DNA from: Macrostomum lignano
Lineage: Eukaryota
Length of the DNA stretch: 64,000 nt
NCBI GenBank assembly: GCA_002269645.1
Contig: NIVC01001883.1
Span: 62,001 to 126,000 of the forward strand
Reading direction: 5' to 3'
Shown here: positions 4,121 to 47,186 of the stretch, piece after piece
Layout of the letters: the number at the start of each line of letters is the position of its first letter
Numbering within the stretch: the stretch's first letter is position 1
Position numbers and translations under genes: made by a program
The notes under the pieces: generated by a model
Told to the model about the DNA's origin: nothing
What the model saw: the letters and a program-made list of their open reading frames with translations, nothing else
Databases searched by the model: none

Positions 4121-4124
4121 TTGC

Positions 4125-7045: not shown

Positions 7046-8268
7046 CAATTGAACAATTCATTATTTTTTCGTCACAGTGCAACACAAATTTAGGCTATCG
7101 AGACTTTTTCATGTTCGTGCGAGTCTGCAAAAACAAAAAGCAATGTCCGGATTTCATTCATTTTAGTTAGACTCGGTTAGTCACTCCCAGTCTGCTTCAG
7201 ATTTTTGGTTTGCCGCGAATCTGTACTTTCATTTTGCCAGGCTCGCTTAGTCGCAGCTGAGGATCGCAATCCCGCGGATTTTTTTTGTTTTTTTTTCAAA
7301 ACGTGTCGTAAAATGCTGTAATTTTTTAATTATACTGCTGTAGCAAGGATTTCTCTATAACAAGAAGTTTCTAGTAGCGGCTGTTAACGACTGAAGCAGT
7401 AGGGCTCGTCAACATTGTACCATGCAGCAGACAGATATGGCCAGACCAGCTCATAGTCCACATTTCTATCTAAGTAAATAGGTGAAGGCAGGTGAAAATG
7501 AAAGTCACTAGGAGAACCTTTAGCATGCTGACTGTTGAGAGGCATTTCTCATTATCGGAAACGAAATCCTATTCACAGTCCTATAATTTCATACTTTTCT
7601 TAAAGCAGCTTTATAATTTCTGTAAGCTGTAGTAACTGTCAAAATAATTAAGTTGTACTCCATGCTGTTGAAACAGGTGAGTTTCAAGTTGCTGATTAAT
7701 AAATTTAGAAACGTTAATTTCTACTTAAGACCAGAACTTTCGCATGCACCGAGTAAATTCCTTTTTGCACTGCTATTTGGATTTGTACATTGTGAGAGGT
7801 TGGACTTGGTATAGAAGCCTAGTGTGACAACTGTGAAATTTTTTCTTGTAAATGAATATTTTAGAGGGTGAGGACCCCGAGCGAATTGAATTAGGTTTGG
7901 AGAATGCGTATTGAAAATGGATAATGGGAGGATTGAGCAAGTAGTGAGTATCCATAATGTATATATTAGTATGTTGGTATTTTCGGGGATAAGATCATGA
8001 CGTAAATTTTGCGACTTTTGGAGACCAGCAGATAGTTCAGAAAGCTGCCTTTATATAATCCTACTATTCCTAAGTCAACCCCTTTTATCGATTTCTTCGA
8101 GAATAATCAATATGCGAGCCCGTAGAAACAATGGCATAATGAAGGAAGTGAAAAAAGTTGTCTGAAAAGCCTCATGCCTACTACTATAATCCTAAGTCAA
8201 ATTTCTCATTCTCACAACAGTATTTACTGTTGCTGTGTGTGTGTGTGTCGTTCGGAAAAAGCCGTCCT

Positions 8269-11200
8269 TCAGGCTAGCCATTCAGGGTGACTAGCCCTCA
8301 GGAAGCGTAGTGTCACCAACTCGTCGTGCAAGTTACTCGTGCCATTGAGGCCACACGTGATGCGGATCCAATCCCACTTCGCGCATTCAAACCAATGGTC
8401 CTTGTCGCTAGGCGCGCCGAACTCTGTACAGGTTGTCATTCGCTCCTTGTTGATCTTGTTTTTCCAGTAATCGGTGTATCTACAGTGCCCTGTCCTGAGT
8501 TGGGCCAGGATGGCGGCCTCCCTTCTGGACGTGGCGGACCTGATGATCGGGTGGTTATATACGGATTTCAATCTCTGGTCGTTAGTAGTGAGGGTCTCTT
8601 TTTCGCGTATTTCTCTATTTTGGGGTGTGTTCTTCTATCACGTCCATGGCTAGGTGTAAAGCTTTTCTTTCAGCCACGAGCGAGCTGCAAAGCGCTCCAG
8701 CGGCTGCAGTCCTCGCGATGGTAAGTTCGTTGCTGTAAGCTATACAAGCTGCACCGCCGTTTCTACCTTCACCGCTGACCGAGACATCAGTGTGAATTTT
8801 AAATTCGGCGTTGACGGCCTCCTTAATAGCCTTCCTCGCGGCCTCGGCGAGATCTGTGTCTCCCTTTTTGGCCTCCTGGGAGCTCATGGAAAATCTTGAT
8901 TCTGTCCGCCTGAAATCTTTTCCACGGTGGGTGTCTTTTAATTGCAAACTCTTCTCTTGGTGCGTTGCAGATCATGAGGCAGAGTTCTCTAGTTTGGTCT
9001 CTCCATCCCCTGTTGGCTCTGAGTCTGCGGTTTCCATGCTGCTCCCACATTTTCTTCTAGGGTTCCAGGGTGGGTCTCTAGCCGCTTTTTCCCACTCCAT
9101 CATGCTCTTGATTCTCGCAGAGCTGGTGATAGGTAGGATTCCCGTTTCCAGATATACGGCATCGATCGGGGTAGACTTCATCAGGCCCGCAGTACTTCTG
9201 AGACACTCTCTTTGGGCTCGTTCTAACTTATCGAAGTTGGACTTTGCTATCCAAGGTAGCCAGGCAGCTTCGCAGTACCAGACACAGCTTTCGACGATAG
9301 ATTTATAGACTTTGATCAATTCTTCTTTATTCCATCCCCAATCAGTAGTAGCAAGCACTTTGATCACTCTGCTGCGTTTCCTCATTTTTTCGATGATCTT
9401 ATCAGTGTGGTCTTGAAAGTGGAGGCCGCTGTCAATAGTGATTCCCAGATATTTGAGTGCTCTTCTGGTTTCGATGGGCCTGTTGTTGATGGTGAGTCCG
9501 AGTCTAAGCGTAGCGTCATGAGGTGACCTGCTGTACAGGCACGCCTCGTACAATCTTCAACTTTTTGGCCTAGCTATAGGTTTTGTCTAAAGCGTTCTGG
9601 ATTCTATAGTTTTGACTTCTTCGATCCTCTCCCCGCTGGTCCATATCGCTAGGTCATCTGCAAAGCCTCCGTACTCAACTCCTTCGGTCTCTTTGCCGTT
9701 CCAGTCGTTGACGTACAGGAGGTAGAGAATCGGCGCGCACACTGAGCCTTGAGGGAGACCTTGGTGGAAACGTCGGTATTTACTAATCCGTCTCCAATGC
9801 GGACTCTAGACTGGCGGCCTTCAAGGAAACTGGAGAACCAACGGGTGAGGTGTACAGGAACTCTTTCGTCCATCAGTCTTTCCACCAGTTTGACCCTACA
9901 AACCATTTCGTAGGCCTTGGAGCAGTCCAGGGTCACTGCCAGGGTCTTCTTTGGTTTACGTAATTACCATCCCTCTTGGATGTTCTGCACCAGTCTAAGA
10001 ACTTGCTCCTCCGTGCTTCTACCTCGTTGAAAGCCGGCTTGCCATGGGCGGATCACCCGGTCTTCTTCCATCCAGTACATGAGTCTGTTGCCTGTTGGTA
10101 ACCATACGTTTCATGATCTTAGCGCAGACTGGAGTCAAGATGATCGGTCGGTATGAGTCCCTCTGCATGGGGTCCTTGCCTAGGTATCGGAATGATTTCC
10201 GCTTTCTTTCAAAGTCTCGGGCATAAGTATTCTTCCCAGCTTCGATTGAAAAGACCTAGCCATCTCATTCTCCTTTGGTAGAAAGGTTTTGCATAAATCA
10301 CACTTCCACTCCGTCGACTCCGCCCTTCTTTTCCGGGGCCATGTTTTTGATGGCGTCGATGAGTTCTTCGTCGCAGAAGGGGATCCCGAATTCCGGGGCC
10401 TCCTCATAGATGGTGAGCCTTCTGGCCACTCTGGCCCTTTGATTCCGGTCTTCTTTTTCCATGTTGACCTATTGTTATTAGCGTAGAGGTCTGCGAAGAG
10501 CGTGGCTTTCTCGCGGTCCGTCCAGGCGGTTTTGTGGTCCGCATTGATGTTTTGGTTGAGTGCGTTTTGCGCTCCTCCAGAGTACAGAGATTTGATGGTG
10601 GCCCATGTTTTCCTACCATCGTCCGCTTCCTCCAGGCTTTCAACATGTTCCCTCCAAAACTCTTGCTTTTTGTTTAGTTTTTTCAATAAGTTTTTGGTTC
10701 TGTGAACACCATCTTTCTCTAACTCTCCGGCGAATCTCTGGGTTCTTTGTCTCTGGTTTTCTGTATCTCTGAAAGTTCCTCGTCCCAGAAGGGTTTGTAC
10801 TTGGGACCGGACTTCCTCTTACTAATGCTCGCTTCCGCCGCCTTGATCAGTGCCTCTCCCAGGGCTTTGGCCTCTTGGCTAACCGAGTTAACAGGAATAT
10901 CATCCGCTAGCTCATCGAACGCGGTCTGGAAAGCGGTCCAATCAGCTTTTTTCCAGGCCCACGCGTGGCGGGCTCGGGATTCCCTAACCTCTCTATCCGT
11001 GTTAATCTCAATAATAATCGGGTAATGGTCAGATCCGAGTCCGTTGACCGTCTTCCAAGAGCTTCTCTGCCCGAGATCTCCAGCTGCAAGGAATATATCC
11101 GGGACACTAGTGCGGCCAGTCCTCCAGTCGGTTCTGGTTGGTGAGCCGTCATTCAGTATGTTGTATCCGTACTCGCTGCACCAGTCAATCAGTTCTCGTG

Positions 11201-11981
11201 CCTCCCTTCTGCTCTCGCGGCCCTGGTCGTCGTCGCTGCCCCAATCGGCTGCATGTAGGTTGAGATCTCCTAGTACCAGCTCTCTTCTATCGGATTTCAT
11301 TCAGCTCCAGATGCTGTCCTCCTCGCGGTCATCCACGTTGGTTATCATGACTTTCTCTTTTCTGCTAGCATCGACCAGGACCCGTACGCCCTCAGTAGTG
11401 GTTCCTTTCCAGCTGTTCCAACGTCTGAAGGAGATGTTGTGCCGGATCAAGGTGAGGAGTCCTCCCCCTTTCGAGTGGTCGCTGCGGCGGATTTCCAAAC
11501 GGTCTTTCCGGATCGTAGTGAAGCCGCTAAAGCGGGGGTTGTACTCCGCGCTTCGAGTTTCGATTCCTGAATGACTGCGACATCGATATTTTGGTCGTGG
11601 AGGAATGCTTCGAGTTCAGCTCTTTTGGTTCCGATCCCGTCAGCGTTCCATTGGAGAATTCTGATGGTTTTAGTTTTGGTTTGTTTCCAACTTTCTTTCT
11701 TTCCTGTCGTAGTGTCTTCGGTCTCATGCTCCTCCCTTTCCTTCTTGATAGTATTTAGGCGTTCGAGACAGTCGCCGCAAGTCCACAGGCCTTTCTTCAC
11801 TTCGGTTTCTAGTTGCTTTCTGCTGGCCTGGGTGCATTTCTTATGATACATTCCATCGCACCGTCTACATTTGGATATCGTGGGCGAGACTCTAATGGCT
11901 TTCCCGCAACCTACTCTCCTGCATTTGGTTCCAGCGTTAGTCTCTCTCACCAGCTGTTCTCTACGATTCTTAAATTCTTCT
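8269..11981 (-). pseudogene. LINE ORF 3' portion: PHD2, AP endonuclease, RT, RNase H, C-terminal cysteine motif (many frameshifts/stops)
   Basis: CRRVGCGK..CRRCDGMYHKKC..WTCGDC; ILQWNADG..IQESKL; LGDLNLH..GSDHYPI; TLDCSKAY; GFADDL; IHTDVS..SSLVAERKAL; QLRTGHC. Confidence 0.87.
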
Positions 11982-12476
11982 AGTAGAATGCATGAGGGGG
12001 CTTCTGGGACAAAATTTGTAACGTCCACCATAATCCCATTAAATCCATTCATATTATCCCTGATAGAATCAGAAAAAAGGGGGGTCGCACTCGCTCACAA
12101 AACGTCCTCCATAATCCCATTAAATCCATCCATATTATCCCCGACAGAATCAGAAAAAAAAGAGTGGGTCGCACTTGCTCCGAAAACTTCGGAGTAACAT
12201 GGAGTATGGAGTAACATACGTAAAAGATTACGACAGCTACTATAACTTTGCAGAAATCATTAGGCAATTGTAGAATGTCGTTACAATACGCTATAAGACT
12301 TTTAGACTGCATTAATAGATATTTTTACGCATGGTATTTTGCTGTGTGGCGGGTGGGTGATAGCGGAATGGGTATGGCAGCTGTTTCTTGTCATAGCGCG
12401 AGCGGTGTGTGCAGCATAGAGAAAAAAGCTTTCCCAGCTCAAGCCTTAACTAGCTCAAAGGATCCCTTGCCTAGCT

Positions 12477-12961
12477 TCAGAAACGCCCATTTAGTTCCTT
12501 GTTTAAACCCCCAGCCTTCTCAACCCCCAGCTCTTTCAGCAGTCTTCCTAGTTCTTTACTTGGCGCATGCAATAAAAAGCCCACCCCTTCTCCCAAACAG
12601 CCGCCAAGCCCCAATCCCAACTTTGTCTTACCAAAAATAACAGCTTTAACTAGCTTCCGAGCGATCGATTCCCTCCACCCGCTTGAAGTCCCCATATTGT
12701 CTAATCTCCTAAGCATTTCTTTATCCCAGCGATTCTTCTCCTCAGGATAATCCTTATACTTTTTGTCGTGCCACATGCAGACAGAGTCTAGCTCATTCAC
12801 AGGCTCATGCCCAGGATTTGGATTATTGTTTTTATCTAACTGTTTTTAAGTGGATTCGAAGGCCCGCAATATTTGTAGCCGGGAATTGTCCAGCCTTTGT
12901 TTGGATGAGGAAGCTTTTCAATTAATCCATGTGAATCTAAGTTACCACCATAGCGTTGCAT
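12477..12961 (-). CDS. Parvovirus-type phospholipase A2 (PLA2X-like), one frameshift in an A5 run near 12845
   Basis: ATG 12961: MQRYGGNLDSHGLIEKLPHPNKGWTIPGYKYCGPSNPLK / QLDKNNNPNPGHEPVNELDSVCMWHDKKY..RWDKEML..KTKLGLGL; Ca-loop-like GYKYCGP and catalytic HD. Confidence 0.82.
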
Positions 12962-12989
12962 TATTTATTTAAAATTTTCTTTTTAAAAA

Positions 12990-14016
12990 ATGGCAGAAGA
13001 AAAACTTAAATCTATCTACTACAGCGACAAAGGATTCTTTGTAGGCAAAAATGCAGTCGCCAAACTCGCAGAACTAAGTAATGAATCAAAACAAACAGTT
13101 GAAAGATGGCTCTCCAAGCAAGCAGTCTACCAAGTCTATTTCCCACCAGTAAAATTTGAAAGGCCCCATTTCAGTATTTATAAACCTAATGAGGCGCACC
13201 AAGCAGATCTTCTGTTTCTCCCCAATGACTCAGGCTACAAGTATGCTCTCACAGTTATAGACATTGCCTCCAGATATAAGGAAACGAGACCACTTAAGAC
13301 AAAGAAGTCAGAAGCAGCTGCAGCTGCCCTCCAAGAAATTTACAAAAACTCACCCCTTAGTTACCCTGAAATCTTTATGACCGACCCGGGAAAAGAATTC
13401 CTAGGTGCGTTGAAATCACTTCGACATAAGTATGACACAAAAATTCGCTACGGAAGAACTGAGCTCCACAGAGACCAGGCTTTTGTGGAAAGATTCAATC
13501 TAACTCTAGCCAAGAGACTATTCACTAAGCAGACAGCAGAGGAGCTGAAACTAAAAAGTGGCCAGTACTATACAAAATGGACAGACCGCCTCCCCACTGT
13601 TATAGAGCAACTGAACAATGAAGTAACACGCATGACTGGATTGAAACCGTCCCATGCAATTAAACAAGACACTGTCGAACTTAAGGCATCTCTTAGAACA
13701 GACAACACACACAAAACACACAACACAAAACACACCTCGAACTACCCTAAGCTTCCAGGAGTTGAATCACCATACATTACGGACAAACTCTGAGTTTCTA
13801 CGCTTTTTATATCTACCTGGAGAGCTAGAGAAAGACACCAAAAGAAGAGCTACAGATCCATACTTCAGCCTTGATGTACATAAAATAGACAGACATTTTA
13901 CCTCCGACTCCGGTGACTATTACTTTTTATCTCAAGCCTTTAACCCTAAATCCCCCACGCGGTCATTCACTAGAGCTGAACTCCTAGTGATACCAGCTGA
14001 CACAGAAATTAATTAA
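12990..14016 (+). CDS. Polinton-type retroviral-like (rve) integrase, frameshift near 13785
   Basis: DDE residues present: HQADLLFL, TDPGKEF, FVERFNLTL; C-terminal RFLYLPGELE..RRATDPYFSL..RSFTRAELLVIPADT in ORF 13654-14016. Confidence 0.9.
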
Positions 14017-14032
14017 AATATTAAAATAAAAA

Positions 14033-14574
14033 ATGACAACGGTTGAAACCAGAACCATCAATAAACTCAATAAAACCGCTAGCCTATGATCTCACTGTAA
14101 TGAGAGTGGTCATGCAAGTTCACAAAGATGCGGAGGTTGTTTAAAGATGACACTTGGTATAGGGAATTGGGATTCGAGAAGAAAGTTTATAAGGCAGAAT
14201 CCGCGGCGCGGACCGCCACTCAAACGTCGGGGGCCGTTAGCATGGCCCGTAAGCGTAAGCGTAAAAAAAACGTAAGCGGTTTGTTCTTAGCACCCAATAT
14301 TGCAGACATTGTAAAGGGTTTGAATATTCTAATCAGAAGTAATCTCAGTCTTAATTGGGTATTTAAGGGAAAGCGAACGGATATTTTGTACAACATCTCT
14401 AACTCTGTTGCTGGAGGAAAGATGTTGGTAGAGAAACCAAATCCAGTGAAAAGAGTTGTATTGAGTAATAAGGAGATTCACGAGATTGTGCTACAGTTTG
14501 AGACTGAAGATGGGGTGGGTGTTGATTTTAACGGTGAAGAGTTTGTATTGACGTTGATCATTGAGAGAATGTAA
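14033..14574 (+). CDS. Probable Polinton minor capsid protein (penton), frameshifted N-terminus
   Basis: ATG 14033 after an A-rich spacer; YRELGF, ILIRSNL..TDILY, LVEKPNP..IHEIVLQFETEDGVGVDFNGEEFVLTLII resemble Polinton single-jelly-roll mCP as recalled; not searched. Confidence 0.6.
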
Positions 14575-14615
14575 GAAAAAAATTACAATTGCAAACTACA
14601 AAACAAAACTACAAA

Positions 14616-14855
14616 TTACAACTGCCTTATAACTTCAGCGAAGTTATAGTAGCTGTCGTAATCTTTTACGTAGGTTACTCCATACTTATGAAACCAGTGA
14701 GATTTAAGTGCTTGACTAATATTAGGGACATTGATATCAACGCCGGGCCAATATTTTCTCATGTACTCGCTGCATTCTAGTTTGCATCGGTACTTACTCT
14801 TGTAATTAGGCTCGTGCACTTTGTAATAAGAACCTGGAGAGACAACTGGAAACAT
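14616..14855 (-). CDS. Small hypothetical ORF (79 aa) next to the right TIR of the mini-Polinton
   Basis: ATG after an A-rich leader like the other element genes; its 3' part (YGVTYVKDYDSYYNFAE.IRQL*) is duplicated in inverted orientation at about 12205-12277. Confidence 0.45.
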   Translation of the reverse strand: MFPVVSPGSYYKVHEPNYKSKYRCKLECSEYMRKYWPGVDINVPNISQALKSHWFHKYGVTYVKDYDSYYNFAEVIRQL

Positions 14856-15269
14856 TTTTAGAGAAAATTTAATTTTTTTTTCGGAGGATGAGCACCCTGC
14901 GCTGAGGATTTAAAGTCTTAGGGATCTGATTTCGCGAATTGAATGTGGGGAGAAGAATGCAGATTATTTTCTGATTGTTTCGAAGATGCTATGGGTGGAT
15001 GTTAGTGGATTATGTAGGACACCTGTTATGCTCTGATTCTGGGATAATATGGATGGATTTGGGTGGATTATGGATGACTTTTTGTGAGCGAGTGCGACCC
15101 TCTGATTCAGGGATAATATGGATGGATTTAATGGGATTATATTTGAAGTTTTCAAAGCGAGTGCGACCCCCCTTTTTTCTGATTCTGTCGGGGATAATAT
15201 AGATGGATTTAATGGGATTATGGAGGACGTGAAAAATTTTGTCCCAGAAGCACCCTCATGCATTCTACT

Positions 15270-15526
15270 TCTTCTTCTTCTTCCGTCCTCCATTCCTCCG
15301 CGATGGTACATTTTTTACATTTCCACTGCGTATTACCGGTCTTGATCTTGTCTTGCTTCGCCCGGGTAAGGCCTGTGCAACTGCCATGGTACTGACATCC
15401 GCAGTTAGCGCACTCAATCGGTTTGGTCCCCGTAGCAATTTTCTTGCCGCACCGGTTACACGGTCCGGAGTTCACTTCGACGTCTCCAGCCTGTACAAGT
15501 CTAGCCGCTGTCCACCATTTTTCCAT
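15270..15526 (-). pseudogene. LINE ORF N-terminus: 2A-like peptide and PHD finger 1
   Basis: MEKWWTAARLVQAGDVEVNSGP then CNRC..CANCGCQYHGSC..WKCKKC; in frame with the PHD2-APE portion once the Polinton is removed. Confidence 0.82.
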
Positions 15527-15668
15527 CCTTTTTTATTTGGTTTTCGGGTTCTTTGTTATTTTTGATAGGTTTTTGTCGTTTGAAGAATTCTGAACATTTG
15601 GATCTGGATGTGCGCCGTTTTCCTTCGAACTGCTTAACTAATGCAACGGCTTGGTGACGCTCCGTTTC

Positions 15669-15750
15669 AATCCGAGTGTTCGTGCATCCGACGGTGATCA
15701 GATCGTCGGCTCCCGTCCGCCGCGTAGAGGCCCCCGGATTATAGGACAGG
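15669..15750 (-). ncRNA. HDV-like self-cleaving ribozyme at the LINE 5' end
   Basis: P1 CCUGUCC/GGACGGG; P2 AAUCCGGG/CUCGGAUU; P3 GCC/GGC; L3 UCUACGC; P1.1 CU/AG; P4 CCGACG/CGUCGG; J4/2 CGAA; its first base abuts the TSD. Confidence 0.77.
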
Positions 15751-16293
15751 CTGTTGCTGTTGTTAAGGTCAACAAGACAAGCTGTTGACAAGAGGTTTTT
15801 TGTCTCCCACCTCATCAGTGAAATGAGTTTTCTGATCGGTAAAATTCAGATCACTGAAAAAAGTTTTGTTTTAAAAAGAAAATCAAAGATGGCAAGTGTC
15901 ATCCACATAGCGTTTGTGGTATCTCGGAGCAGTTTCTAACTTCATACGTACATTTTCATATGTCAAGCTTGAATTAAGACCAAAAATACTTGAATTCGTA
16001 TCCATAAAACACAAACCTAGTCTCAATGTTCAACTGCAATACGGCTATTCTAAGTAACCTGACCACATTACGGAACTTCCCTCCCCCTGACATGTCCTCT
16101 TGGATCCTGCAGCCAAATCTTTAGCATTTAATTAAATGTTGAAATATTCCTGTTTCTGTCTAGTTTATTAAATAAAAATTTAAATAAACAGTCAATCGCC
16201 CTGAAAATGAGCAAATGTAGTCCAAATGCATCGGAAATTAATAAATAAATGTTGATAAGATCTATTGAAGATATTTTAACCATTTTATTTTAG

Positions 16294-16698
16294 ATGGCAA
16301 CAAAGGAAATCAAGCAAAGTCAGGATCTCTCGCTCAGTCTAGAAGACGAGCCTATAGAAGACACAGAGCCGCTTGTTTCCTTTCAAAGCAACCAAGAGAA
16401 GCAACTTGCAGTTAACGAACCATTGAAAAAAGCAACTGATTTTGAAAGGCTCACTCCAGGCAGCATCGAGTGGGTGAAGCCCGGTGATGTCTTCAAGATC
16501 AACGGTCAGCTGATTATTGTTGAAGAGGTACAGTGTAACAAAGTCTGTGTGGCTTGCAGAGAGAAAAATCTTCTTAGAGCTGGCCAAGCCTAGCTCTCTC
16601 AATAAATACCAGTATATTTTCCAGCCTGACTAGGCTGACCAATCAGCCGCTACCTCTGGCGTGCTCGCGCTCCAGAGTATGCACATGCGCGAGTACAA

Positions 16699-16750
<52 letters not shown>

Positions 16751-19700
16751 CCCCCCATCCCCCACTCTGCACAGAAAGCGAAACGCAGTCACCACATACA
16801 GCATGCACCCAATAACGTATATGAATTTAAAGCGATTCATTGCACTAAGAACAAGAAACAGTCCAAATTTACACTTTTCAAAGACAAGAGAGTATCAAGA
16901 GAAAATTTCACGGTCAATGTGATCAAATCGAAAAGTACACACCGTCTGCAGCCCGATTGCCAGCTCGCTCTTTTCCCAACGTCCCATTGCCACCCGCCTA
17001 AGGATGTTGTCCAAAGAGCTCGCAGCCGCCTGAACGAAATTCAGAGTGACTCGTCACTTTTCGTCAAGTGGTGCAAGATGAAGGACCCAACCCACTGTTC
17101 CGAGATCCTTGTGCCGATCTTCGTGTCAGACGACCACGAAATCCACGAGGTGAAAGTTAAAGACCACCTGAATTTGCAGCATGTTGCTGGCCCACTTCAC
17201 GGAGAGGTTTCAAATATCGACAACCTGAGTGACGAATCGCTGCTGCTAACGATGCGCATTCAAACTAGCAGGATGCGATCCGTTCCATTGGTTCGAATCG
17301 AAGAGAAGGAGCTTCTCGCCCCCGTTCCGGTAGTAGCGTCAGTTCCCCAGTGCGTGGACGAGGAGGAACTTCTCGCCAGGGTTGAAATCCTGGACAGACT
17401 TGTGTTCAGCAAAGACATCTCTACCCTGGCATTCTGCCGACTGCTTACTAATCCGAATCTTCGTGATAGCGCATGGGGTGAGCAGGTGGCGATGCTCCCA
17501 GACACCGAAGCTAAAGTAAGTCCTCTCTGCAAAAGCACGAGTCCAGAAAGTTTAAAAATCGGCAGCATCATTTCAATCGATGGAGCATACACAGTGGTCA
17601 TCGCAGTTCGCTGTGGTGCTGATAGAGTCCATGTAAAGATGGTGCAGTATGGAGCTCAGTCATTGGATGAAGACGAAACAGAGTGCCAGATCAAGTACAT
17701 AATCAAGAAAAGAGAGACGGACACACAGCTCAGCGTACACAATGAGATTAAAAAGGATTGCCCTCTGTACCACCCTGTTCTTGGGCCACAAGGTTTATAT
17801 GCAGAAGAAGCATTGACGCCTATTTTACTTCAAAGCCTGAAGAAGGGTGATGTGATTCGAATAAGCTCGCGCTGGATCATTGTTGAAGATTCGGAATTCG
17901 CAAATGGCTCGTGCACTGTGGTCGCTATTTTCTACGACAAAATAAAGCTTCTCGAGACAAACAGGGTAATTAGACATACTCTTAACTTTAGGGTTATAAA
18001 CCCTAGTAAGCAAGTTGAACCAGAGGGCTGGCTTTGTCGCTATGCTGAGGCCTGGTGCTTCGACCCAGACATTGTGATCAAAAGAGCTCATAGTCGACTT
18101 AACGAGAGTCAGTACTCACTGATCTCTAATAACGGAGAGCATTTTGTGAAATGGTGCAAGACAAAGTCTTCCAGTCACAGGCCAGAGTGCCTTGTCCCAA
18201 TTTACTTGCCCAATGAGCACACTCACTCGGTGAAAGTTGGAGATCATCTGAACTTCACATGTGATAGTGGTACAAAGCTCTATGGAGAAGTGACTGAGGT
18301 GACAGAGTTGAAGTCGAAGCAGAATATTCTACTCTGCATGAACGCGATAAAGCCGAAGTCAATGTGCTATGTGCAAAAAAGTGAGCTCACTCTTGTCGGC
18401 CCTGTGAGCGTCGTTGTAACGGCCCCACTGTCCGTCAGTGAAGCAGAGCTGTCGCAGCGAGTTCTGTTTATCGATAATTTGGCTTTCAAAGGAACAGAAA
18501 GCTCAATGAATATCTGCCGTTTATCTAACTAAATCAAAACTTGAGCTTGAAGACTGGAAGGACGTAATCTGCCACAGTCAGCCCTTCAAAAATGCAGCGA
18601 CTGAGCAGGCTATTCTCTGCCGCCAAAGACGTCCAGATCAGTTGAAAGTTGGCGATATAATATTTCTGGATGGTGTGTACCGAGTTGTTGCCGAAATCCA
18701 CCTTTGTGATGCTGAAGCAGCTGGACGAGTCAAGATCGTGACTGTTCAATATGACTTGAGTCTGACAGAGAGTGGTGTGTCAAAGCTGAAGTACGCGATT
18801 CGAGCAGAGGAGACGGAAGCCGTGCTGTGCGTTCACAACAATCCAAGTTTGGACTGCCTCTTACACGGTGCTGGAAGAGATATGCCAATGTATACATCTA
18901 ATAAAGTTTACGATGTACGAACCATTTCACAGGGCTGTGTCATTTCGATGAGAAGAAGGTTTCTGCAGTATCAGCATTCCGTGGTTGTCAGTGATCCTAC
19001 ACTGGAAGGAGATAGCGGATCAGCTCAGTCCTGTGCTTCATTGGAGGTTATTGAATACGCGATGAAGCTTACTAGCAGAAATAAAGCTGTGAAATATAAA
19101 ATTCGAGTCGATGTTTCAAAGCAGGAAGTCTACCTCGTCGTGTATGATAAAACCGGTGAAGAAAAGAAATACTCTCCAGACAAAGTGATTGAGAGAGCCC
19201 ACTCAAGGCTGGGGGAAAAGCAGCACAACACACAATGGAACAACAGTCGGGATTTCGCTCGCTGGTGCAGCCTTCAGCACCCAAGCAACAGGGAGCAGTG
19301 CAGGATTCCAGTTACATCGGCTCAGCAGCTGGTCGATTTCAAAAGAGGTCCCGTTAAGTTTCGTAAGTCGCCAGAAATTTATACCCACGACGCTGTAATG
19401 AGAGACTGCACAGCAGTTGAAGGTTGCAGCGACATCGTCAGGGTTACTCTGTATGAAAATAACCATGAGCAGCGTAGAGTGAGGCTCGAGGACTTAACCA
19501 TCGATAAAGGTGAGAGCTTGATTCGTCGGGTGAATTACGAAGGCAATAAGGAATTCGCCACCGATGAGTTCAGCATCTTGAAGGACCTGATTGATTGCAC
19601 TTTTCTGAATGCCGATGATGACGTTAAAGGATGGACGGGGAAAGAGAAAAAGTGTGGCAGTCGAGTCACCAGCCGAGACTTCTGTTATTGGCTCAAAACT

Positions 19701-20666
19701 ACGAAAAAAGAACTCTGCAGCATTAAATACTTGTTTGAAAAAAACCTTGAAACCATGCAGAAAAAAATGGCGAAACTGTGCTGCGAAGGCGTCCTATATG
19801 ACAATACGGATGAGCAAAGACGTCTGAGAATCGAAATCGAGCATGGAGTAGACAGGCGCGACTTAAGACTTCATGACCACATCATTCTGAACCGTACGGT
19901 AGATGAAAAAGTAAAAGAAGTTCATTTTATCCTAGTTGAGTGGAACGAGGAGACACACACTGGTGTCGGTGTGACGTACGAGTTTCCACCAGAACCTACT
20001 GGAATTGGATTTATGAAGTTCAATGGATTTCTTCGAGTGAGCGGCCCTAATCAGATGGATAAGGTCGTTCACAACTCGGAGCCTGACTGGAATGAGATTG
20101 ATGACAGGTTCAACACCCTAAGGGGCATCAAGGAGTACCACCTCTTGCGCAACAATTGCGAGCACTTTGTAAATTTTTTGATTTATGGCCGCGGTAGCTG
20201 CCTTCAGCTGAGCAAGCGGGTCTGGCAGATCGCCCACACGTTACCGAGCGCTATTCAAAACCTAGCTTCCTCCGTGACTCGAGTACTGCGAATGGCCGTC
20301 GCTGTAGTGCTGAGAGCGAATCCAACCATGGGAGAAGCATTTTCGTTTATTCCAGACATCCTCGCAGCCGAAGGTGGAAGCATCGCTTTGATCGGCATTG
20401 TGAATTTTGTTGCCTGGCTACTGCTTCGACATCGCCACGCAAACAGTGGGATGTCCCTTCAGGAGTACCAGGAGAGAAGGCTGGGCATCCTGTGCCGCGC
20501 ACTTATTCCCATCGCGGGGAGCATCGCAGTAGCACTCATCACATTCTTCAACCCTTTCTCGGCAGGCCTGACTGGCGCAGGTGTCGGTGTTGGTGTCACG
20601 ACCTTCGGAATTGCCTGTGCCATACCGAAGCTGCTGGTTATTATCAAGGCCTGGAGGCATCCGTAG
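16294..20666 (+). CDS. Large tandem LRAT-like (permuted NlpC/P60) domain protein with C-terminal hydrophobic helices, about 1350 aa
   Basis: Putative exon 16294-16467, intron 16468-16774, long exon 16775-20666 with a 1-nt frameshift at about 18521 (restores CRYLTKSK, aligning with CRLLTNPN). Repeated RA.SRL.E..NN.EHF/RDF..WC motifs; canonical YHLLRNNCEHF at 20136-20168. Confidence 0.75.
16702..16747. repeat. (GA)n microsatellite
   Basis: Direct reading; lies in the putative intron. Confidence 0.97.
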
Positions 20667-22702
20667 GCTCGCTAACCCCATGCTTCCAAAGTAGTGACAA
20701 GTCGACTCAAGCTGAAACATCAAAAGCTGAAGACTAAAACAGTGCTGCCATTTGCCACTCATCTGCGAGGCCTGCCGCGTGCTAATTTACTTTAATTGTG
20801 GTTTGCGCTTGCACTTTTGGCTTGTGCACCTGGTTCGTATCTTTCCTGTTTACACGCTCCAGTGTACAGCACGGTCTTTTTTATCCTGGGTTTGTGGGTT
20901 GGTGTTTGCTTGTGCTTTCGATTACTTCGTGCAGTGCATAAAAAAGATTCAGATATTTCAGATCATCTTTTCAGCCTTCTGCGTGACACTACGCTCGTAT
21001 ATTGTACTCGAGAACACAATGTGACGGTTTTATAATTCTGTAATTAGAAGAAAATGTATGTAAAAAAACTATGTGCTTAATCTATTCTAGGTTTCAAATA
21101 ATATGTTACTTTGTTTAATTGGATTCCGTTTCCAAGAAATTCGACTCGTATTTAAGCATGCTACTTATCCTCTTCTGTAAGCGTGTGGCAGCCTTGGACG
21201 TAGATCAATCAGTTTAACATTTTAAAACCGCAGCACGTTGTGATAAATAATCAGAGTCGATCAAAATAAGAACTATTTCTTATACAATAGCGAATCGTCC
21301 GGGCCTGACAGGCGTAGCTACTTAAACATACGCTACTAATAGTAGCGCACTCTAGTCTCCTTCGCTAAGTACATTGATTTATTTGTTTAATCCTAAATAA
21401 TATCAAAATCACCATATTACTATTAGTACTAAATTAATCATAAGTATACTAGATTAGCATATTTTTGAAAATGTACCCTGTCAGTTTGACAGACTTCCCG
21501 CCTCTTGCTTGTTCTGTGTACGAGTTACCAGCCTGGATTGTAGGTGATTTTTTGTTTCGTTATCATTCACTAATTTTGAATTCTATATCTTTTATCCAAA
21601 ATTATTTTAATAATTAGTAGACTATAAATTTTAGTAATCACTAACTTACAATGTGACAGCAATTGACTGAAATTTCAATGAAATAAATTGTATAATCCGC
21701 TTTTACCTGATAAATGAGATTTGTAATCAGCTGATTTGTGCTAGCCGTCTTAGGAACTCAAGAACCCTGCCTTGCTGTGGACATCACCCCAGCAAGGCAA
21801 ACTATTTGCACATTCAGCACAATTAGTTTTGGTCATTGTTCCACAACATATAGTTATTACCCCATGTAGAAATGTCATAACGTGACTGCTTTTTATAATT
21901 ATTATTTATTCTCGCCTCCCTGTCTTTGCATTTAGAACGAAAAATGGTGAAATAATGACGTCTGTGCTGGGCAAAGTACACACAGTACTCGTATTTTTTC
22001 TGCCATTATTCAAACTCTGCTACCATGCTAAACAATCTGCCATTGCAAAGTACTCAGCGTAATTACCAATCAGGAGCGGCTCCTTGCTTTTGTCCTTGAA
22101 CTCCAGAATCAGCGGCAGCGTCCTGTCTGCGGGGCTCAGGCGTCTGGTATAGTTGATCATCCGCAGGGCGTCCTCCAGTGGCTGTTTCTGCATTGGAAAG
22201 AGTGGCTGTTGTATTCTGGAAGTCCACAAGTACAGCAAGTTGTCTCTGGCGGAGTGGCCCATGCTTCAATCTTATTACGCAAACGAATAAACTTCAAAAG
22301 TAGGCGACATTTGGTACCTGAAGTCGCTTCATACCGGCCAAAAGTTCACAACGTCAGAATGAGCAAAATGTCGGCCCCTTGATTACTCAAAATGCCGACG
22401 CTTCGCATTGTCAAAATTTTGCATCTTCAAAGTTCCACAAAATCGAAACTTCAAAAGTCGTGCCCTTTTTGAACTATCGACGCTTATGAAGGGGCCGACA
22501 TGCTCGCTTTTTCGACGATGCGAAAGAAAGTATCATTCGACGTTATAGAATTTGGAGGATATGATCAGGCGAGGCCCGGTACATCACTGGCCTACATAAG
22601 CCTTGTCAGATAACTTCACAGGCATTTAAAAAATTATGAAACTACAAAAACTATCAGTTCTACAAAGCTTAAAGTTCTGAATCGTTGAATCTAGAAAGCG
22701 AT

Positions 22703-23002
22703 AATACACCTGCTCCGATTGGGCCAGATGTGCAACTGACAGCTCAGCCGCAGCTATTGCGTGGCGCATCTGACGGCTGCATACGGCTATTCAGTCCACG
22801 GACTGGAGGTCGCCACACACACTCTCTCAATTACCCCAGCTAATGCTGGCACCCATTTTACAGCAGGGTGAACTCAACTTCTGAGGCAATGCAGAGTTAA
22901 ATGTCTTGCTTAAAGACACAAATTGTTCCAGTGAGATCGAGAATCGAACCGACGACCTACAAGTCGTGAGTCCGACGCTCTAACCACTAAGCTACAACCC
23001 CC
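22703..23002 (-). mobile_element. tRNA-derived SINE (copy 1)
   Basis: Head GTAGCTTAGTGGTTAGAGCGTCGGACTC..GGTTCGATTC (A/B boxes); body TGTGTCTTTAAGCAAGACATTTAAC..CTGTAAAATGGGT; homologous to 54064-54312. Confidence 0.8.
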
Positions 23003-25174: not shown

Positions 25175-27845
25175 ACACAACAACAAACTACAGCAACCCT
25201 GAGCAAGCCAAATTAGGTTGCTGTCAAATGGCGCGCGCAAGCGCAGATTTGCGCAGAATAGCGAGTCCGCGGGGGTCGGAGATTTGATCGTCTCTTAAAA
25301 TCAGGTCGACGAAACGCAGACTACTCGCCTGACCAAGCCGCCGCGGCACGTCTTGCAGCAGCAGCAGCACGTCTTGAAGCGGCTCAGGGCAGTACTGCTC
25401 TGCCCGGATGACGTGGCCGGCCAGCTGTAGGCGCCGGATTCGCAGCAACTGGCTGGGTCGGGAGAGCTTAGCCCGTCGGTATAACTCGTCATTACTGGTG
25501 TTGGTGGTGGCGGTCGGCGAGTATTGGACACCGAAGGCGGCTCTCAGGAGTCCAGCGTGAACGGCGTCGAGTTGCCGCTCCTGCGGGCCGGTCGGTGTCA
25601 ACGTTTCAGTGATCCGGCAGCGCGGGGCTCTGCAGGACAGTCCGCACGGTGCGGAATGCGCCCCAGGTAAGCGCCCTGCGCCGTGCCATGTCCTCCGTGA
25701 TGCTTGGCACCAGACCACCGAGGTAGACGAACTCTTTGCAGCGGGGCAGCAACGCCACCTGCCCGTTCGTGCAGCGGCAGTAGATCTCAGCTGGGAGGTC
25801 CGTCGGCACGGTCAGCACCATTGTCTTTTTGGTATTCACGGACAGTCCGATCGCAGCGGCCGCCGCCGTCAGCTGGTCTAGCAGGCGTTGAGCTCCTTCA
25901 GCTGTGCTAGACAGCAGCGCTAGATCGTCCGCGTACGCTAGGACGGAGAGTCGCTTCTCGGGGTGCCGCTTGCTTGTTCTGCGGCAGAGCAAGAATCCTT
26001 TGGAGTCGTCAGGGAAGCCAGTGCGCAGTACCCAATCCAGGACCAGGACTAATAGAAAAGGAGCCAGGGTGTCCCCTTGGAGAACGCCGGAAGACGTGTC
26101 AAAGAAGTCGGAAAGGCCATCCGGTGTCACAACTGCCGCCCTAGTCTCCTGTCTCCTTGTACAGAGCTAACACAGCCGTCACCAGCTGCTCGGGTACGTG
26201 ATACGCGCGCAGGATGTTCGCGATGACCCGCCTCGACACCGAGTCAAAGGCCTTCAGGAAGTCTACGAAGATGCAGATGATGGTCGACTGATGAACCTGG
26301 GTCACCCACCAGGTTCAGAGCGTTGCGTCTCTAGCGGCCTGTCAGCTGATTGACGACCGACCAGACGACACGCGGTTTCTTGTCGGGACCGGCGTCCGTG
26401 ATCTCCTGAATAGCGGTCTCTACCGCGGCGCGTTGCCGGGCTTTAAATGTCTCCGCTAGAGTCTCCTCTTCCTTCTCCGCGGGCTGTCCGCTCCTCCGCA
26501 GTCTCTCCACTGTCAGCTGGGCCTGCCGCAGCACTTCGTCGTTCTGCCACACTGGCCGACTCCTTTCTGCTGGCTTCACCAGCGGTAGAGTTTTCGTAGG
26601 GGCGGCGGCTTGGATGGCGGCACTGTGGCTGGGGTTGTTGTATCCGGCCGTTCTTCAAGCGCCTCGGCAGACAGAAGCGGCCACTTGTAACCGGGTCGCG
26701 TAGGGCGCGGAAGTAGCGTTTTGGCTGTTTTTTCGGTGGTCGATATAGCGGGTCCTTCAGGTGCAGGTCGCAGTAGAGCAGCCTATGGTCTGACCGCACT
26801 GCCAACGGAGCCACCGTATCGCAGTTAGTCACTCGTCGTCGTTCTCGCTGGCGAAGCAGCACGTGGTCGTGCTGTGCGAGTCTCTTCCTATCAAATTTTC
26901 CAGACGCTTTCCGACGTGGCCGCTTACAGCCAGCAAATGTTGCCAATCTGTGAAGCGGCTTCCTGAACAGCGTGTTTGCTGAGACCAGGTCATGGCGGTC
27001 CATGAAATCCACTAGGGCATTAGTATTGTTGTTTTCGCGTGGCGTTACAAAGCGAGCGCGCTCGGACCTTCGCATGACCACGTTGAGGTCTCCGAGTACC
27101 AGTACAGTGTCGCGTTGAGCGGTCTTCTCCAGCTGCGCTGACAGGAACTCCAAAAACTGTCGGTGCTCCTCAGGGCGCGCAGCCGTGGGTGCATAGGCAT
27201 AGAAGAGCCGCATGTTACGCTTGCGGAGTCGGATGTCGACGCGCAGAAGCCGCGGCGAGAGGCTTCTCAAAGCGTGTACTTTGCTGAAGCCTCGGCCCGG
27301 TTAGAACGCCAATTCCTCCCAGACCTTTCGAGTCTGCTGATGTGTATTGCAGCAGCCAGCCACCGCCTACTAGGTGCTCCTTGTGAAGCCCAGGTTCGGC
27401 CGTGATGGAGAGCTCCTGCAGCATAATTATACATGTATCAAGTTGTAGGTCACCTGCAAGCTGGGCCAAAAGATGTTGTCTCCACTTTGCTCGCAAAGTT
27501 CGGCGGTTCCAGGTAGCAATTCTGAGCTGTTGCTGTGCGCATTTTGGTTCGGCTGGGGTCCGGTGATTTTGAACCTCACGGTCCCTGGCGCCACCCAAGC
27601 GGATCTGTACCACCAGTTGGCAGGTGCCGGCTGCCTGTGGCTCGTCGCTCGCGTCCCCGAAGTCGGCCACGGCGATTTCGCTCACGGCGGCGCCGTTCTT
27701 TGCGTCGACGCTCACTTCAGCGGCCCCGCTGAGTGGATGGTGTACCGCTCTTGGCAGCCGCAGCAGAAGCGCGGCTCTACGTTGAGGCCTTGGAACGCAC
27801 CGCTAGCATGCTTGGCGGCGGCACCAGGAGGCGGCGGCACTATTT
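25175..27845 (-). mobile_element. RTE-clade non-LTR retrotransposon, internally deleted and frameshifted
   Basis: APE: IATWNRRTL..LQEL, YAYAPT, LGDLN, RSDHRLL; RT: SGVLQGDTLAPFL, AYADDLAL, FVYLG; C-terminal RRLQLAGHVIR; N-terminal RT subdomains missing near 26300; boundaries approximate. Confidence 0.85.
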
Positions 27846-41988: not shown

Positions 41989-42166
41989 AGGCCGGCCATT
42001 GTCAGCCTACCAGAGCCTCACACTGACCCATGGATGTAGTGGCCGTATAACCTGCTCAGGGGAGTCGGCGGAACGGGCAGTAGTTCTAATAAAAAAGATA
42101 AACCTTCGCATATCGTCTCACCTCGCACTGCCAGTTGCCCTTTATGCGTCCCTGTTTCAGCCCAGA

Positions 42167-46534: not shown

Positions 46535-47186
<652 letters not shown>

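What the first reader, a model, noticed from the sequence alone, without database searches (positions are those of the whole stretch)
16294..20666. Giant tandem-LRAT protein with a catalytic gradient and a C-terminal Gly-rich membrane segment
Seen: roughly nine related modules, each starting with a (L/V)K.GD.I-like strand, in an A-B-C-A-B-C-A-A'-LRAT pattern. Early modules lack the catalytic residues (SDSSLFVKWC, NNGEHFVKWC). Two late modules keep the His (YQHSVVV, YTHDAV) but have Ser instead of Cys (NNSRDF, TSRDF). Only the last has His plus NNCEHF, followed by hydrophobic GxxxG-rich helices. Known: LRAT/PLAAT (HRASLS) enzymes normally have one H-box/NC domain plus a TM tail. Inference: an array of pseudo-enzyme lipid- or ligand-binding modules coupled to one active acyltransferase/phospholipase or protease, possibly an immune or membrane-remodelling effector. 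The single-T frameshift at about 18521 is probably a sequencing error.
Basis: partly seen in the sequence, partly recalled or inferred. Interest (0 to 1): 0.7.

Follow-up and report, generated by a model that had tools for sequence, protein, structure and literature searches.

The report
Flatworm tandem LRAT-domain membrane protein
This is an unannotated copy of a Macrostomum flatworm gene for a very long membrane-anchored protein: one apparently working lipid-modifying (LRAT/PLAAT-type) domain sits next to the anchor, behind several dead copies of that domain. The family is real but unstudied, and this copy has a one-base frame break that may make it a pseudogene.

Summary
The sequence features are real. 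Window 16294-20666 (+) encodes about 1,365 codons in three frames. The pieces are a 78-codon first exon, a 274-nt GT-AG interruption, 572 codons, a +1 frame break at about 18516-18520, then 715 codons to the stop.

The product is colinear end to end with an intact, intronless 1,379-aa Macrostomum lignano paralog (PAA65928.1, 45% identity). The window itself is M. lignano or a very close relative.

Order of parts: leader-A1-B1-C1-A2-B2-C2-A3-A4-A5-hydrophobic tail.
- A1, A2, A3 and A5 are LRAT/PLAAT-like.
- A4 is only weakly LRAT-like.
- C resembles the N-terminal beta half of A.
- B is a confidently modelled beta-plus-helix module with no detectable relative.

Only A5 has His plus NNCEHF. It lies about 70 residues before three hydrophobic segments. 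That cassette (the only NCEHF-type domain, then 23-75 residues, then hydrophobic segments) recurs in 11 of 13 flatworm and bivalve relatives checked; two bivalve relatives have no such motif.

Most likely this is a cytosol-facing, membrane-anchored acyltransferase/phospholipase carrying a non-catalytic array. Function is inferred, not shown.

Whether this copy is live cannot be decided. It shows no decay of conserved positions, but no protein is annotated for it. The family is a new architectural variant of a known enzyme family. Interest is moderate.

The parts
16294..16527 (+). Exon 1: hydrophilic acidic leader plus the first two strands of module A1 (LTPGSIEWVKPGDVFKINGQLIIVEE). A pyrimidine-rich ...ttttattttag lies directly before the ATG.
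   Evidence: It aligns to the N-terminus of the M. lignano paralogs. No strongly hydrophobic N-terminal segment, so no signal peptide.
16528..16801 (+). A 274-nt interruption with GT...AG ends in compatible phase. It contains a (GA)n microsatellite at 16702-16747. It is either an intron or a disrupting insertion.
   Evidence: It is absent from the intronless paralog in L002. Only the microsatellite part recurs elsewhere. A second in-phase acceptor exists at 16774/16775.
16802..17095 (+). Rest of module A1, an LRAT-like pseudo-domain. His1 is replaced by Gln, His2 is kept, and Cys is replaced by Ser (SDSSLF, Ser codon at 17054).
   Evidence: The A-module profile matches a canonical LRAT profile at 99.5%, E 3e-22. 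Residue table.
17096..17497 (+). Module B1: a beta-rich core followed by three helices, with invariant VP and two His.
   Evidence: AF2 pLDDT is mostly 73-93 across the structured core of B1. Alignment A7. No Pfam, PDB or Foldseek relative.
17498..17824 (+). Module C1: a beta-only module resembling the N-terminal half of A. It ends at the VHN strand and lacks the helix that would carry the Cys.
   Evidence: hhalign A~C 82.8%, E 9e-6. MAFFT places the N-halves of A modules on C1. pLDDT 84-92.
17825..18178 (+). Module A2, an LRAT-like pseudo-domain. His1 is Arg, His2 is Phe, and Cys is Gly (NNGEHF, Gly codon at 18134).
   Evidence: Pfam PF04970 E 1e-9, 39.2 bits..
18179..18578 (+). Module B2, which contains the frame break.
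18516..18520 (+). +1 frame break in ...TGCCGTTTATCTAAC.... There is one base too many beside a TTT run. A TAA stop follows at 18530-18532 in the upstream frame.
   Evidence: tblastn and blastp junctions with P0004 and P0006 are contiguous to the residue. Sequence. The paralog copy in L001 reads through this point in one frame.
18579..18914 (+). Module C2.
   Evidence: Low-confidence three-strand model.
18915..19289 (+). Module A3, an LRAT-like pseudo-domain. His1 is kept (codon 18975), His2 is Glu, and Cys is Ser (NNSRDF, codon 19245).
   Evidence: Pfam PF04970 E 1.9e-7. hhalign against the canonical LRAT profile 99.2%..
19290..19703 (+). Module A4 (A'), a possible highly diverged LRAT-like module (YTHDAV ... 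TSRDF).
   Evidence: The strand-then-helix pattern resembles A3 and A5 in the AF2 model, pLDDT about 70-80. hhalign against canonical LRAT gives only 34%, with the His aligned. No Pfam or PDB sequence hit.
19704..19853 (+). Helical linker between A4 and A5.
19854..20198 (+). Module A5, the only module with His (VHFILV, codon 19923) plus NNCEHF (Cys codon 20157).
   Evidence: Pfam PF04970 E 5.9e-7. The profile hits PLAAT2/3 and the LRAT chimera, with the Cys aligned to their NCEHF. hhalign 96.6%. Foldseek finds PLAAT3 4fa0/7zom at prob 1.0/0.99, TM 0.62, for some LRAT-like module of this piece; the output gives no query range, so it cannot be assigned to A5.
20199..20666 (+). Tail: amphipathic helices, then three hydrophobic segments (20373-20426, 20481-20549, 20565-20645). 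The last is Gly/Ala/Val-rich. A basic loop (RHRHANSGMSLQEYQERR) lies between segments 1 and 2. The stop is at 20664-20666.
   Evidence: The layout is conserved in the paralogs.

Best explanation
This locus is an unannotated paralog of the Macrostomum lignano 'Mlig000580-type' LRAT-domain gene family.

**Shown**
- The conceptual product is about 1,365 aa with no N-terminal signal sequence.
- It has an internally duplicated A-B-C block.
- Four clear LRAT-like modules are present (A1, A2, A3, A5) and one doubtful one (A4).
- Only the last module (A5) has the His and the NCEHF cysteine.
- A5 sits about 70 residues before three hydrophobic segments.

**Inferred, by analogy with PLAAT/HRASLS enzymes**
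- In PLAATs the Cys-His pair forms an acyl-thioester, and the C-terminal hydrophobic domain places the cytosolic catalytic domain on endomembranes.
- By that analogy the bulk of this protein is cytosolic and the tail inserts into a membrane, possibly as helical hairpins.
- A5 would act at the membrane surface as a phospholipase A1/2 or an O-/N-acyltransferase.
- The dead LRAT modules, the C half-modules and the B modules would be non-catalytic. They might serve as binding, spacing or regulatory parts.

**Status of this copy**
As assembled, this copy cannot make the full protein, because of a +1 frame break inside B2. Either it was disabled very recently or the extra base is an assembly error.
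For: **Gene and architecture**
- The window protein is colinear with the intact 1,379-aa paralog across the frame break. That paralog is one open 1,379-codon ORF in L002.
- The doubled A-B-C is shared by both paralogs.
- Profile tests support the LRAT nature of A, A3 and A5 and so does the fold match.
- The residue table shows His+Cys only in A5.

**Anchor**
- The strongly hydrophobic segments are in the tail.
- In 11 of the 13 flatworm and bivalve relatives checked, the only NCEHF-type motif lies 23-75 residues before 2-4 hydrophobic segments. Two bivalve relatives, P0016 and P0022, have hydrophobic segments but no such motif.

**Constraint**
- The window copy keeps 165 of 184 (90%) of the columns that are invariant in four paralogs. 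Intact annotated paralogs keep 81-89%.

**PLAAT mechanism and anchor role**
- From PMC4624172.
Against: - No enzymatic or expression data exist for any family member.
- No protein is annotated for this locus in the 15-billion-protein collection, although neighbouring genes are annotated.
- The ORF is interrupted twice: by the 274-nt GT-AG insert and by the +1 break.
- The closest paralog has Asp at the A5 His position. So catalysis may not be essential to the family.
- The third triad residue in A5 is Thr, not His or Asn. I read this from the module sequences against the motif columns.
- The N-terminal half of A5 was not aligned to PLAATs by sequence methods.
- The tail has three segments rather than the single PLAAT helix, and AF2 confidence there is below 50.
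Confidence: 0.55

Rival explanations
1. This copy is a recently inactivated pseudogene in a birth-and-death multigene family. The +1 base at about 18518 is real, and the 274-nt GT-AG insert in A1 may be a second lesion. No full-length protein is made, and function resides in intact paralogs such as Mlig000580g1.
For: - There is a frame break with a stop 4 codons later.
- The insert is absent from the intronless paralog.
- No annotated protein matches this locus, although the annotation of this species is RNA-seq-driven.
- Another family copy in L001 is disrupted by a frame-changing indel of a few codons and is also unannotated.
- L002 holds a partial, frame-shifted tandem duplicate.
- The published assembly was Pilon-polished with Illumina and RNA-seq reads, which removes most single-base errors.
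Against: - Only one frame error occurs in about 4.1 kb.
- There are no in-frame stops in 572 + 715 codons.
- Retention of family-invariant residues (90%) equals that of intact paralogs.
- The extra base sits at a T-run.
- Polishing is unreliable in this neopolyploid, duplicate-rich genome (inference).
- The window is not identical to the deposited contigs that I could compare, at 91-98% identity. Its assembly history is therefore unknown.
Confidence: 0.45
2. The frame break splits the locus into two separately expressed products. One would be a soluble N-terminal scaffold (A1-B1-C1-A2-most of B2). The other would be a shorter membrane protein starting at an internal Met (MPMYTS..., A3-A4-A5-tail), for example through spliced-leader trans-splicing.
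For: - M. lignano transcripts are frequently trans-spliced, and about 7% of assembled transcripts are polycistronic precursors.
- Shorter annotated family members exist, such as P0023 (592 aa) and P0029 (377 aa).
Against: - The break falls in the middle of module B2, not between modules.
- Every residue is colinear with single-chain paralogs.
- The first ATG of the downstream frame lies at the end of C2, so it would discard most of C2.
Confidence: 0.08
3. A5 is catalytic but does not act on lipids. It would act as an NlpC/P60-type peptidase, amidase or thioesterase on a protein or small-molecule substrate that the upstream modules recruit.
For: - The LRAT family belongs to the papain-like NlpC/P60 superfamily.
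- There are weak Pfam side-hits to Peptidase_C97 (A5, E 0.026-0.045) and to Amidase_6 in bivalve relatives.
Against: - The best sequence and fold matches are PLAAT2/3 and LRAT, not peptidases.
- The NCEHF motif and a membrane anchor right after the domain are PLAAT hallmarks.
Confidence: 0.1

Closest known systems
PLAAT1-5 / HRASLS enzymes (human PLAAT3 = AdPLA, PDB 4fa0, 7zom; PLAAT2 4dpz)
   Same: - The fold is the permuted NlpC/P60 type, and some LRAT-like module of the C-terminal piece matches PLAAT3 at TM 0.62 (the match cannot be assigned to A5).
- A5 has an NCEHF motif with the Cys aligned.
- A His lies on the second strand.
- The catalytic domain is followed by a C-terminal hydrophobic membrane anchor.
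   Different: - PLAATs are about 160 aa with one domain and one TM helix.
- Here about 1,190 residues of non-catalytic modules precede the domain.
- The anchor has three hydrophobic segments after a linker of about 70 aa.
- The third triad residue is Thr.
- Sequence similarity is limited to the C-terminal 40 residues of the domain.
Macrostomum lignano PAA65928.1 (BOX15_Mlig000580g1, 'LRAT domain-containing protein', 1,379 aa), together with PAA paralogs P0001-P0005 and P0007
   Same: - PAA65928.1 has the same module order, including the doubled A-B-C, and the same tail.
- It is 45% identical and colinear end to end.
- The shorter paralogs equal the window's A2-to-tail portion.
   Different: - PAA65928.1 is an intact, intronless ORF and has Asp in place of the A5 His.
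- The window copy has His+Cys in A5 but carries an insert in A1 and a +1 frame break.
- All of these proteins are uncharacterised.
Bivalve tandem-LRAT proteins (Potamilus streckersoni KAK3603616.1, Mercenaria XP_053378500.1, Mytilus XP_076105740.1, Ruditapes XP_060572676.1)
   Same: - They carry arrays of up to 10 A-type LRAT-like modules that lack the Cys.
- Most of those checked also have one NCEHF domain lying 23-75 residues before 2-3 hydrophobic segments; the Ruditapes protein and one other have no NCEHF-type motif.
   Different: - The order is reversed: the active domain and anchor are N-terminal and the dead array is C-terminal.
- No B or C modules were recognised.
- Tail sequences are not detectably homologous.
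LRAT-family proteins thought to be non-catalytic or atypical, such as vertebrate LRATD1/2 (FAM84A/B) and C. elegans EGL-26 (from my own knowledge; not tested here)
   Same: They are LRAT-fold proteins in which the catalytic residues are altered and a non-enzymatic role is suspected.
   Different: They are single-domain proteins, not arrays fused to an active domain. No comparison was run here.

Membership tests
LRAT / PLAAT (Pfam PF04970, permuted NlpC/P60) | Significant match to the family model | tested here: met
   A2 scores 39.2 bits, A3 31.9 and A5 30.2, against a cut-off of 24.3. A1 qualifies through the A-module profile (99.5% against a canonical LRAT profile). A4, B and C have no Pfam hit.
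LRAT / PLAAT (Pfam PF04970, permuted NlpC/P60) | NCEHF(V) motif with the nucleophilic Cys at the start of the C-terminal helix | tested here: met
   Met for A5 only. NNCEHFVNF aligns to the NCEHFVN of PLAAT2/3. At that position A1 has Ser, A2 Gly, A3 Ser and A4 probably Ser (weak alignment).
LRAT / PLAAT (Pfam PF04970, permuted NlpC/P60) | First His (general base) on strand 2, about 80-90 residues before the Cys | tested here: inconclusive
   The His is clearly aligned for A3 and for paralog A modules. For A5, the His of VHFILVEW lies 78 residues before the Cys on a predicted strand. However, HMMER and hhalign aligned only the C-terminal 39 columns of A5.
LRAT / PLAAT (Pfam PF04970, permuted NlpC/P60) | Second polar triad residue (His35 in PLAAT3, Asn in PLAAT1) | tested here: inconclusive
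   By motif alignment the position in A5 is Thr (GVTYE), and it is Thr in six of the seven family members compared; the most divergent (P0007) has no GVTYE motif. Whether Thr can play this role is unknown.
LRAT / PLAAT (Pfam PF04970, permuted NlpC/P60) | Fold: antiparallel beta-sheet packed on helices, with the Cys helix last | tested here: met
   Foldseek finds 4fa0 and 7zom at prob 1.00/0.99, TM(target) 0.62, over 120 columns. The output does not say which module matched. A3, A4 and A5 all show strands followed by two helices.
LRAT / PLAAT (Pfam PF04970, permuted NlpC/P60) | C-terminal hydrophobic membrane anchor after the catalytic domain | tested here: met
   Three hydrophobic segments begin about 70 residues after the Cys. 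PLAATs have a single segment.
LRAT / PLAAT (Pfam PF04970, permuted NlpC/P60) | Phospholipase A1/2 or acyltransferase activity through an acyl-thioester | not testable with these tools
   This needs biochemistry.
Macrostomum Mlig000580-type multi-LRAT family | Colinear leader-A-B-C-A-B-C-A3-A4-A5-tail architecture | tested here: met
   Piece 2 aa 27-573 maps to P0006 aa 106-668, and piece 3 aa 3-715 maps to P0006 aa 669-1379. Alignments.
Pseudogene | Disrupted reading frame | tested here: met
   A +1 break lies at about 18516-18520, with a stop at 18530-18532. The 274-nt insert in A1 needs splicing.
Pseudogene | Relaxed constraint: loss of family-invariant residues and accumulation of stops | tested here: not met
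   165 of 184 invariant columns are kept (90%), against 81-89% for intact paralogs. There are no in-frame stops in 1,287 codons.
Pseudogene | No transcript or protein | not testable with these tools
   The only evidence is indirect: no annotated protein in the collections searched.

The most novel reading that the evidence does not exclude
Flatworms and bivalves may share an undescribed class of membrane-anchored PLAAT-like enzymes. In this class an array of dead LRAT domains, plus the unclassified B module, would act as a sensor, oligomerisation platform or autoinhibitory stack. It would control a membrane-proximal phospholipase, for instance one that ruptures organelle or pathogen-containing membranes on demand, as vertebrate PLAATs do in the lens. 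The lineage-specific expansion would then reflect immune or cell-clearance roles.
Probability: 0.12. Interest if true: 0.7.

Novelty: new variant of a known kind. Interest (0 to 1): 0.42.

Why it matters
PLAAT/LRAT enzymes are known as small, single-domain, tail-anchored proteins. This family shows the same catalytic cassette fused to long arrays of inactivated copies of itself. The arrangement recurs in two spiralian phyla, in opposite orientations, and none of these proteins has been studied.

Macrostomum lignano is a tractable model with RNAi and transgenesis. If the family is functional, it offers a natural system for asking what pseudo-LRAT domains do: lipid binding, scaffolding or regulation.

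Module B is confidently modelled but has no structural relative, so it may be a new domain.

For genome annotation, the result flags an unannotated family member and at least one clearly broken copy in a tandemly duplicating cluster.

Tried and rejected
- **Apparent active site in the paralog's A2.** The closest paralog's A2 seemed to have an intact triad (KWH..., AIHYG, ANCGTRF). In the multiple alignment the Cys is one position off, and Gly occupies the nucleophile column, so I dropped the idea.
- **Intron as a transposon.** Only its (GA)n microsatellite recurs elsewhere.
- **Checking the frame break in other genome copies.** I tried to reach the homeologous copies of this locus in the deposited M. 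lignano assembly. The GLTP neighbour gave two contigs (L003, L004), but its 10-kb flanks stop short. The APEX1 neighbour was not returned by the last homology search. The window's own APEX1 protein differs by a few residues, so an exact look-up was pointless.
- **B and C fold.** Foldseek against the PDB gave only meaningless two-barrel hits, with rmsd 17-20 Å. HMMER against the PDB gave nothing for B or A4.
- **Tail homology.** Neither Pfam nor a comparison with the bivalve anchor region detected any.
- **Conserved 300-bp element downstream.** Rfam found nothing there.
- **Literature.** I found nothing on LRAT in Macrostomum or bivalves, or on the Mlig gene identifiers.
- **A short intron as a cure for the frame break.** Rejected, because homologous residues abut on both sides of a single extra base.
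- **Programmed +1 frameshifting.** Rejected for lack of any known slippery or stop context (my own reading of the sequence).


Full report
**What is in the sequence**

On the + strand an ATG at 16294 opens a 99-codon ORF. Two very long ORFs follow in other frames: 16661-18532 (623 aa) and 18642-20666 (674 aa). They are the longest ORFs in the 64-kb window; the next longest is 402 aa.

The three-frame translation and homology to paralogs give this model:
- Exon 1 runs 16294-16527 and ends ...IIVEE|GTACAG.
- A 274-nt interruption ends ...CATACAG| at 16801. It contains (GA)n at 16702-16747. A second in-phase acceptor exists at 16774/16775.
- 572 codons follow, 16802-18517.
- One extra base lies beside a TTT run at about 18516-18520.
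- 715 codons follow, 18519-20663, then the stop.

The frame break is exact. P0004 aa 319 ends at 18517 in one frame and aa 320 starts at 18519 in the next. PAA65928.1 aa 668 and 669 behave the same way. No residue is missing, so an intron cannot explain it.

I kept an X at the break in all conceptual joins and searched the pieces separately.

**Source organism and family**

A neighbouring GLTP ORF (about 42160-42838) is 100% identical to M. lignano BOX15_Mlig000594g4. The DNA is only 91-98% identical to the two deposited contigs carrying that gene. The window therefore comes from M. lignano or a very close relative, but from a different copy or assembly.

The word-indexed search with the C-terminal piece found only five proteins, all M. 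lignano 'LRAT domain-containing' proteins of 826-1,132 aa at 37-43% identity.

The exhaustive profile search found 989 proteins at E <= 1e-3. Among them is PAA65928.1 (Mlig000580g1, 1,379 aa). It is 45% identical and colinear with the whole window product. It is encoded by one uninterrupted ORF in L002.

The shorter paralogs correspond to the window's A2-to-tail portion. The window gene and Mlig000580g1 both carry an extra leader-A-B-C block, which is an old internal duplication.

The family sits in tandem clusters that include broken copies. L001 holds an unannotated copy 89-94% identical to PAA65928.1, with a frame-changing indel of a few codons in A2. L002 holds a partial, frame-shifted tandem duplicate.

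No protein matching the window copy exists in the collections searched.

**The modules**

- **Pfam.** LRAT (PF04970) passes its threshold on A2, A3 and A5 only.
- **Profile-profile comparison within the family.** A~A3 scores 98.9% (E 3e-17) and A~C 82.8% (E 9e-6; N-terminal 62 columns). Nothing is significant for B, A4 or A5 against A.
- **Against a profile of canonical single-domain LRAT proteins.** A scores 99.5% and A3 99.2%, both over the full domain. A5 scores 96.6% over the C-terminal 39 columns only. A4 scores 34%, B 30% and C 31.5%; in those three only the first strands align.
- **AF2 model of the C-terminal piece.** Mean pLDDT is 52.9, but 60-89 over A3, A4 and A5. All three show five or six strands followed by two helices, with the NC-type motif on the last helix.
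- **Foldseek on that model.** The top hits are human PLAAT3 (4fa0, 7zom) at prob 1.00/0.99 and TM 0.62. The output does not say which module matched.
- **A5 profile against the PDB.** It hits PLAAT2/3 and the LRAT chimera, with the Cys of NNCEHF on their catalytic Cys.
- **AF2 model of A1'-B1-C1.** It is confident over B1 and C1, with pLDDT mostly 73-93. B is a beta core plus three helices, and C is an all-beta module.
- **Foldseek on that model.** Nothing was found: prob <= 0.15 and rmsd 17-20 Å.
- **Module B.** It has invariant VP and two invariant His residues, and no Pfam or PDB hit.
- **Module C.** MAFFT spontaneously aligns the N-terminal halves of A modules onto C. C ends at the VHN strand that precedes the helical half in A and A5.

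In short, A1, A2, A3 and A5 are LRAT-like. C is a half LRAT-like module. A4 is possibly LRAT-like. B is unclassified.

**Catalytic residues (coordinates)**

| Module | His1 | His2 | Cys position |
|---|---|---|---|
| A1 | Gln | His | Ser |
| A2 | Arg | Phe | Gly |
| A3 | His | Glu | Ser |
| A5 | His (VHF) | Thr | Cys (NNCEHF) |

The A5 His1 and His2 assignments are my motif reading of the module sequences against the columns; A5 itself was not in that alignment. A4 has YTHDAV and TSRDF at the equivalent places, but its alignment is weak.

The 'gradient' is not conserved, however:
- The A3 position is S/D/R/G among paralogs.
- The A4 Ser is Asp in one paralog.
- The closest paralog has Asp instead of the A5 His.

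**The anchor**

Three hydrophobic segments lie in the last 100 residues. Elsewhere only one short stretch in C1 just passes the hydropathy cut-off. The tail has two overlapping GxxxG motifs and 8% Gly.

A basic loop between segments 1 and 2, and the segment lengths, are compatible with hairpin insertion. That is my inference; AF2 confidence in the tail is below 50.

I checked 13 family members, flatworm and bivalve. In 11 of them the only NCEHF-type motif lies 23-75 residues before 2-4 hydrophobic segments. Two bivalve relatives (P0016, P0022) have hydrophobic segments but no such motif.

In the bivalves Potamilus, Mercenaria, Mytilus and Ruditapes, up to 10 dead A-type modules follow the anchor instead of preceding it.

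**How it most likely works**

PLAAT/HRASLS enzymes use the NCEHF Cys, deprotonated by the first His, to form an acyl-enzyme. They need the C-terminal hydrophobic domain for endomembrane localisation (PMC4624172).

By analogy, A5 is a membrane-surface phospholipase A or acyltransferase, and the 1,190 upstream residues are a cytosolic, non-catalytic array. That analogy is the whole basis for the functional claim. No member of the family has been studied.

**Is this copy alive?**

For decay:
- There is one frame break.
- The insert must be spliced out, and the intronless paralog lacks it.
- No protein is annotated for the locus.
- Genuinely broken copies occur in the family.
- The published assembly was polished with Illumina and RNA-seq reads.

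Against decay:
- There are no stops in 1,287 codons.
- 90% of family-invariant columns are retained, the same as in intact paralogs.
- The extra base lies at a homopolymer, in a duplicate-rich neopolyploid genome.

I could not reach the homeologous copies to compare them. I put the pseudogene reading at about 45%.

**Verdict**

The family is an undescribed architectural variant of LRAT/PLAAT that is already present, unnamed, in databases. This particular copy may be dead. Interest is moderate.

Noticed in passing
window 33483-41992: A giant minisatellite: a 28-bp unit (TAGATCTTCAGGCTGGATTATCGCCTCC) repeated 307.5 times at 94% match, directly upstream of the GLTP gene. More arrays follow at 42940-43997 (30 bp), 46537-47185 (ATCT)n, 47765-48409 (33 bp) and 48789-50000+ (15 bp). 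They explain the strong AT/GC skew seen at 34-50 kb.
   Followed up: partly
window 21060-21360; L001 280-620; L002 6290-6620: A non-coding element of about 300 bp lies about 400 bp downstream of the gene. It is 77% identical to elements flanking LRAT paralogs on two other M. lignano contigs, which is more conserved than the coding sequence (64%). Rfam found no hit. It may be a dispersed repeat or a family-associated regulatory or UTR element.
   Followed up: partly
window 29464-31723 (+): A three-exon APEX1-like AP endonuclease gene of 337 aa. Its exons start at 29464, at about 30509 and at about 31456. It is 95-100% identical per exon to the copies on L003 and L004.
   Followed up: partly
window ~42160-42838 (+): A GLTP / ceramide-1-phosphate-transfer-protein gene, 100% identical to M. 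lignano BOX15_Mlig000594g4. This identifies the source organism.
   Followed up: yes
window 3113-6264, 12990-13793, 25224-27715: Retroelement remnants. They comprise a TNP-like RNase H ORF (-), LTR-retrotransposon RT/RNase H ORFs in shifting frames (+), an integrase core (+), and a non-LTR endonuclease/RT on the minus strand.
   Followed up: no
window 15218-15526 (-): An ORF just upstream of the gene has a Cys/His-rich motif resembling a PHD or zinc finger (CNRCGKK...CANCGCQYHGSC...WKCKKC). It is probably part of a mobile element.
   Followed up: no
window 22932-23001 (-): A borderline Rfam tRNA match (30.7 bits against a gathering score of 29) that ARAGORN did not confirm.
   Followed up: partly
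L001 ~4788-8899 (M. lignano NIVC01004522.1): An unannotated, frame-disrupted copy (89-94% identical to PAA65928.1) lies immediately upstream of the annotated paralog P0004. The disruption is a frame-changing indel of a few codons inside A2.
   Followed up: partly
L002 14848-17098 (M. lignano NIVC01001606.1): A partial tandem duplicate of the 3' half of Mlig000580g1 (aa 631-1379, 93% identical, with its own frame shift). The annotated gene range (10001-17101) spans it, although the full protein is encoded by 10001-14137 alone.
   Followed up: partly
protein P0002 (M. lignano Mlig032532g1), aa ~95-175: A perfect-looking 12-aa tandem repeat (VEGVRTLPDTPA, about 7 copies) is inserted in the same A-module loop where the window gene has its 274-nt insert. 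This loop seems to tolerate insertions.
   Followed up: no
module B (window 17096-17497 and 18179-18578): B has an invariant VP and two invariant His residues (H..H.VK.GDH) across nine copies. It follows directly after the conserved WCK...H of module A. This could be a metal site or another functional site. The module has no detectable structural relative.
   Followed up: partly
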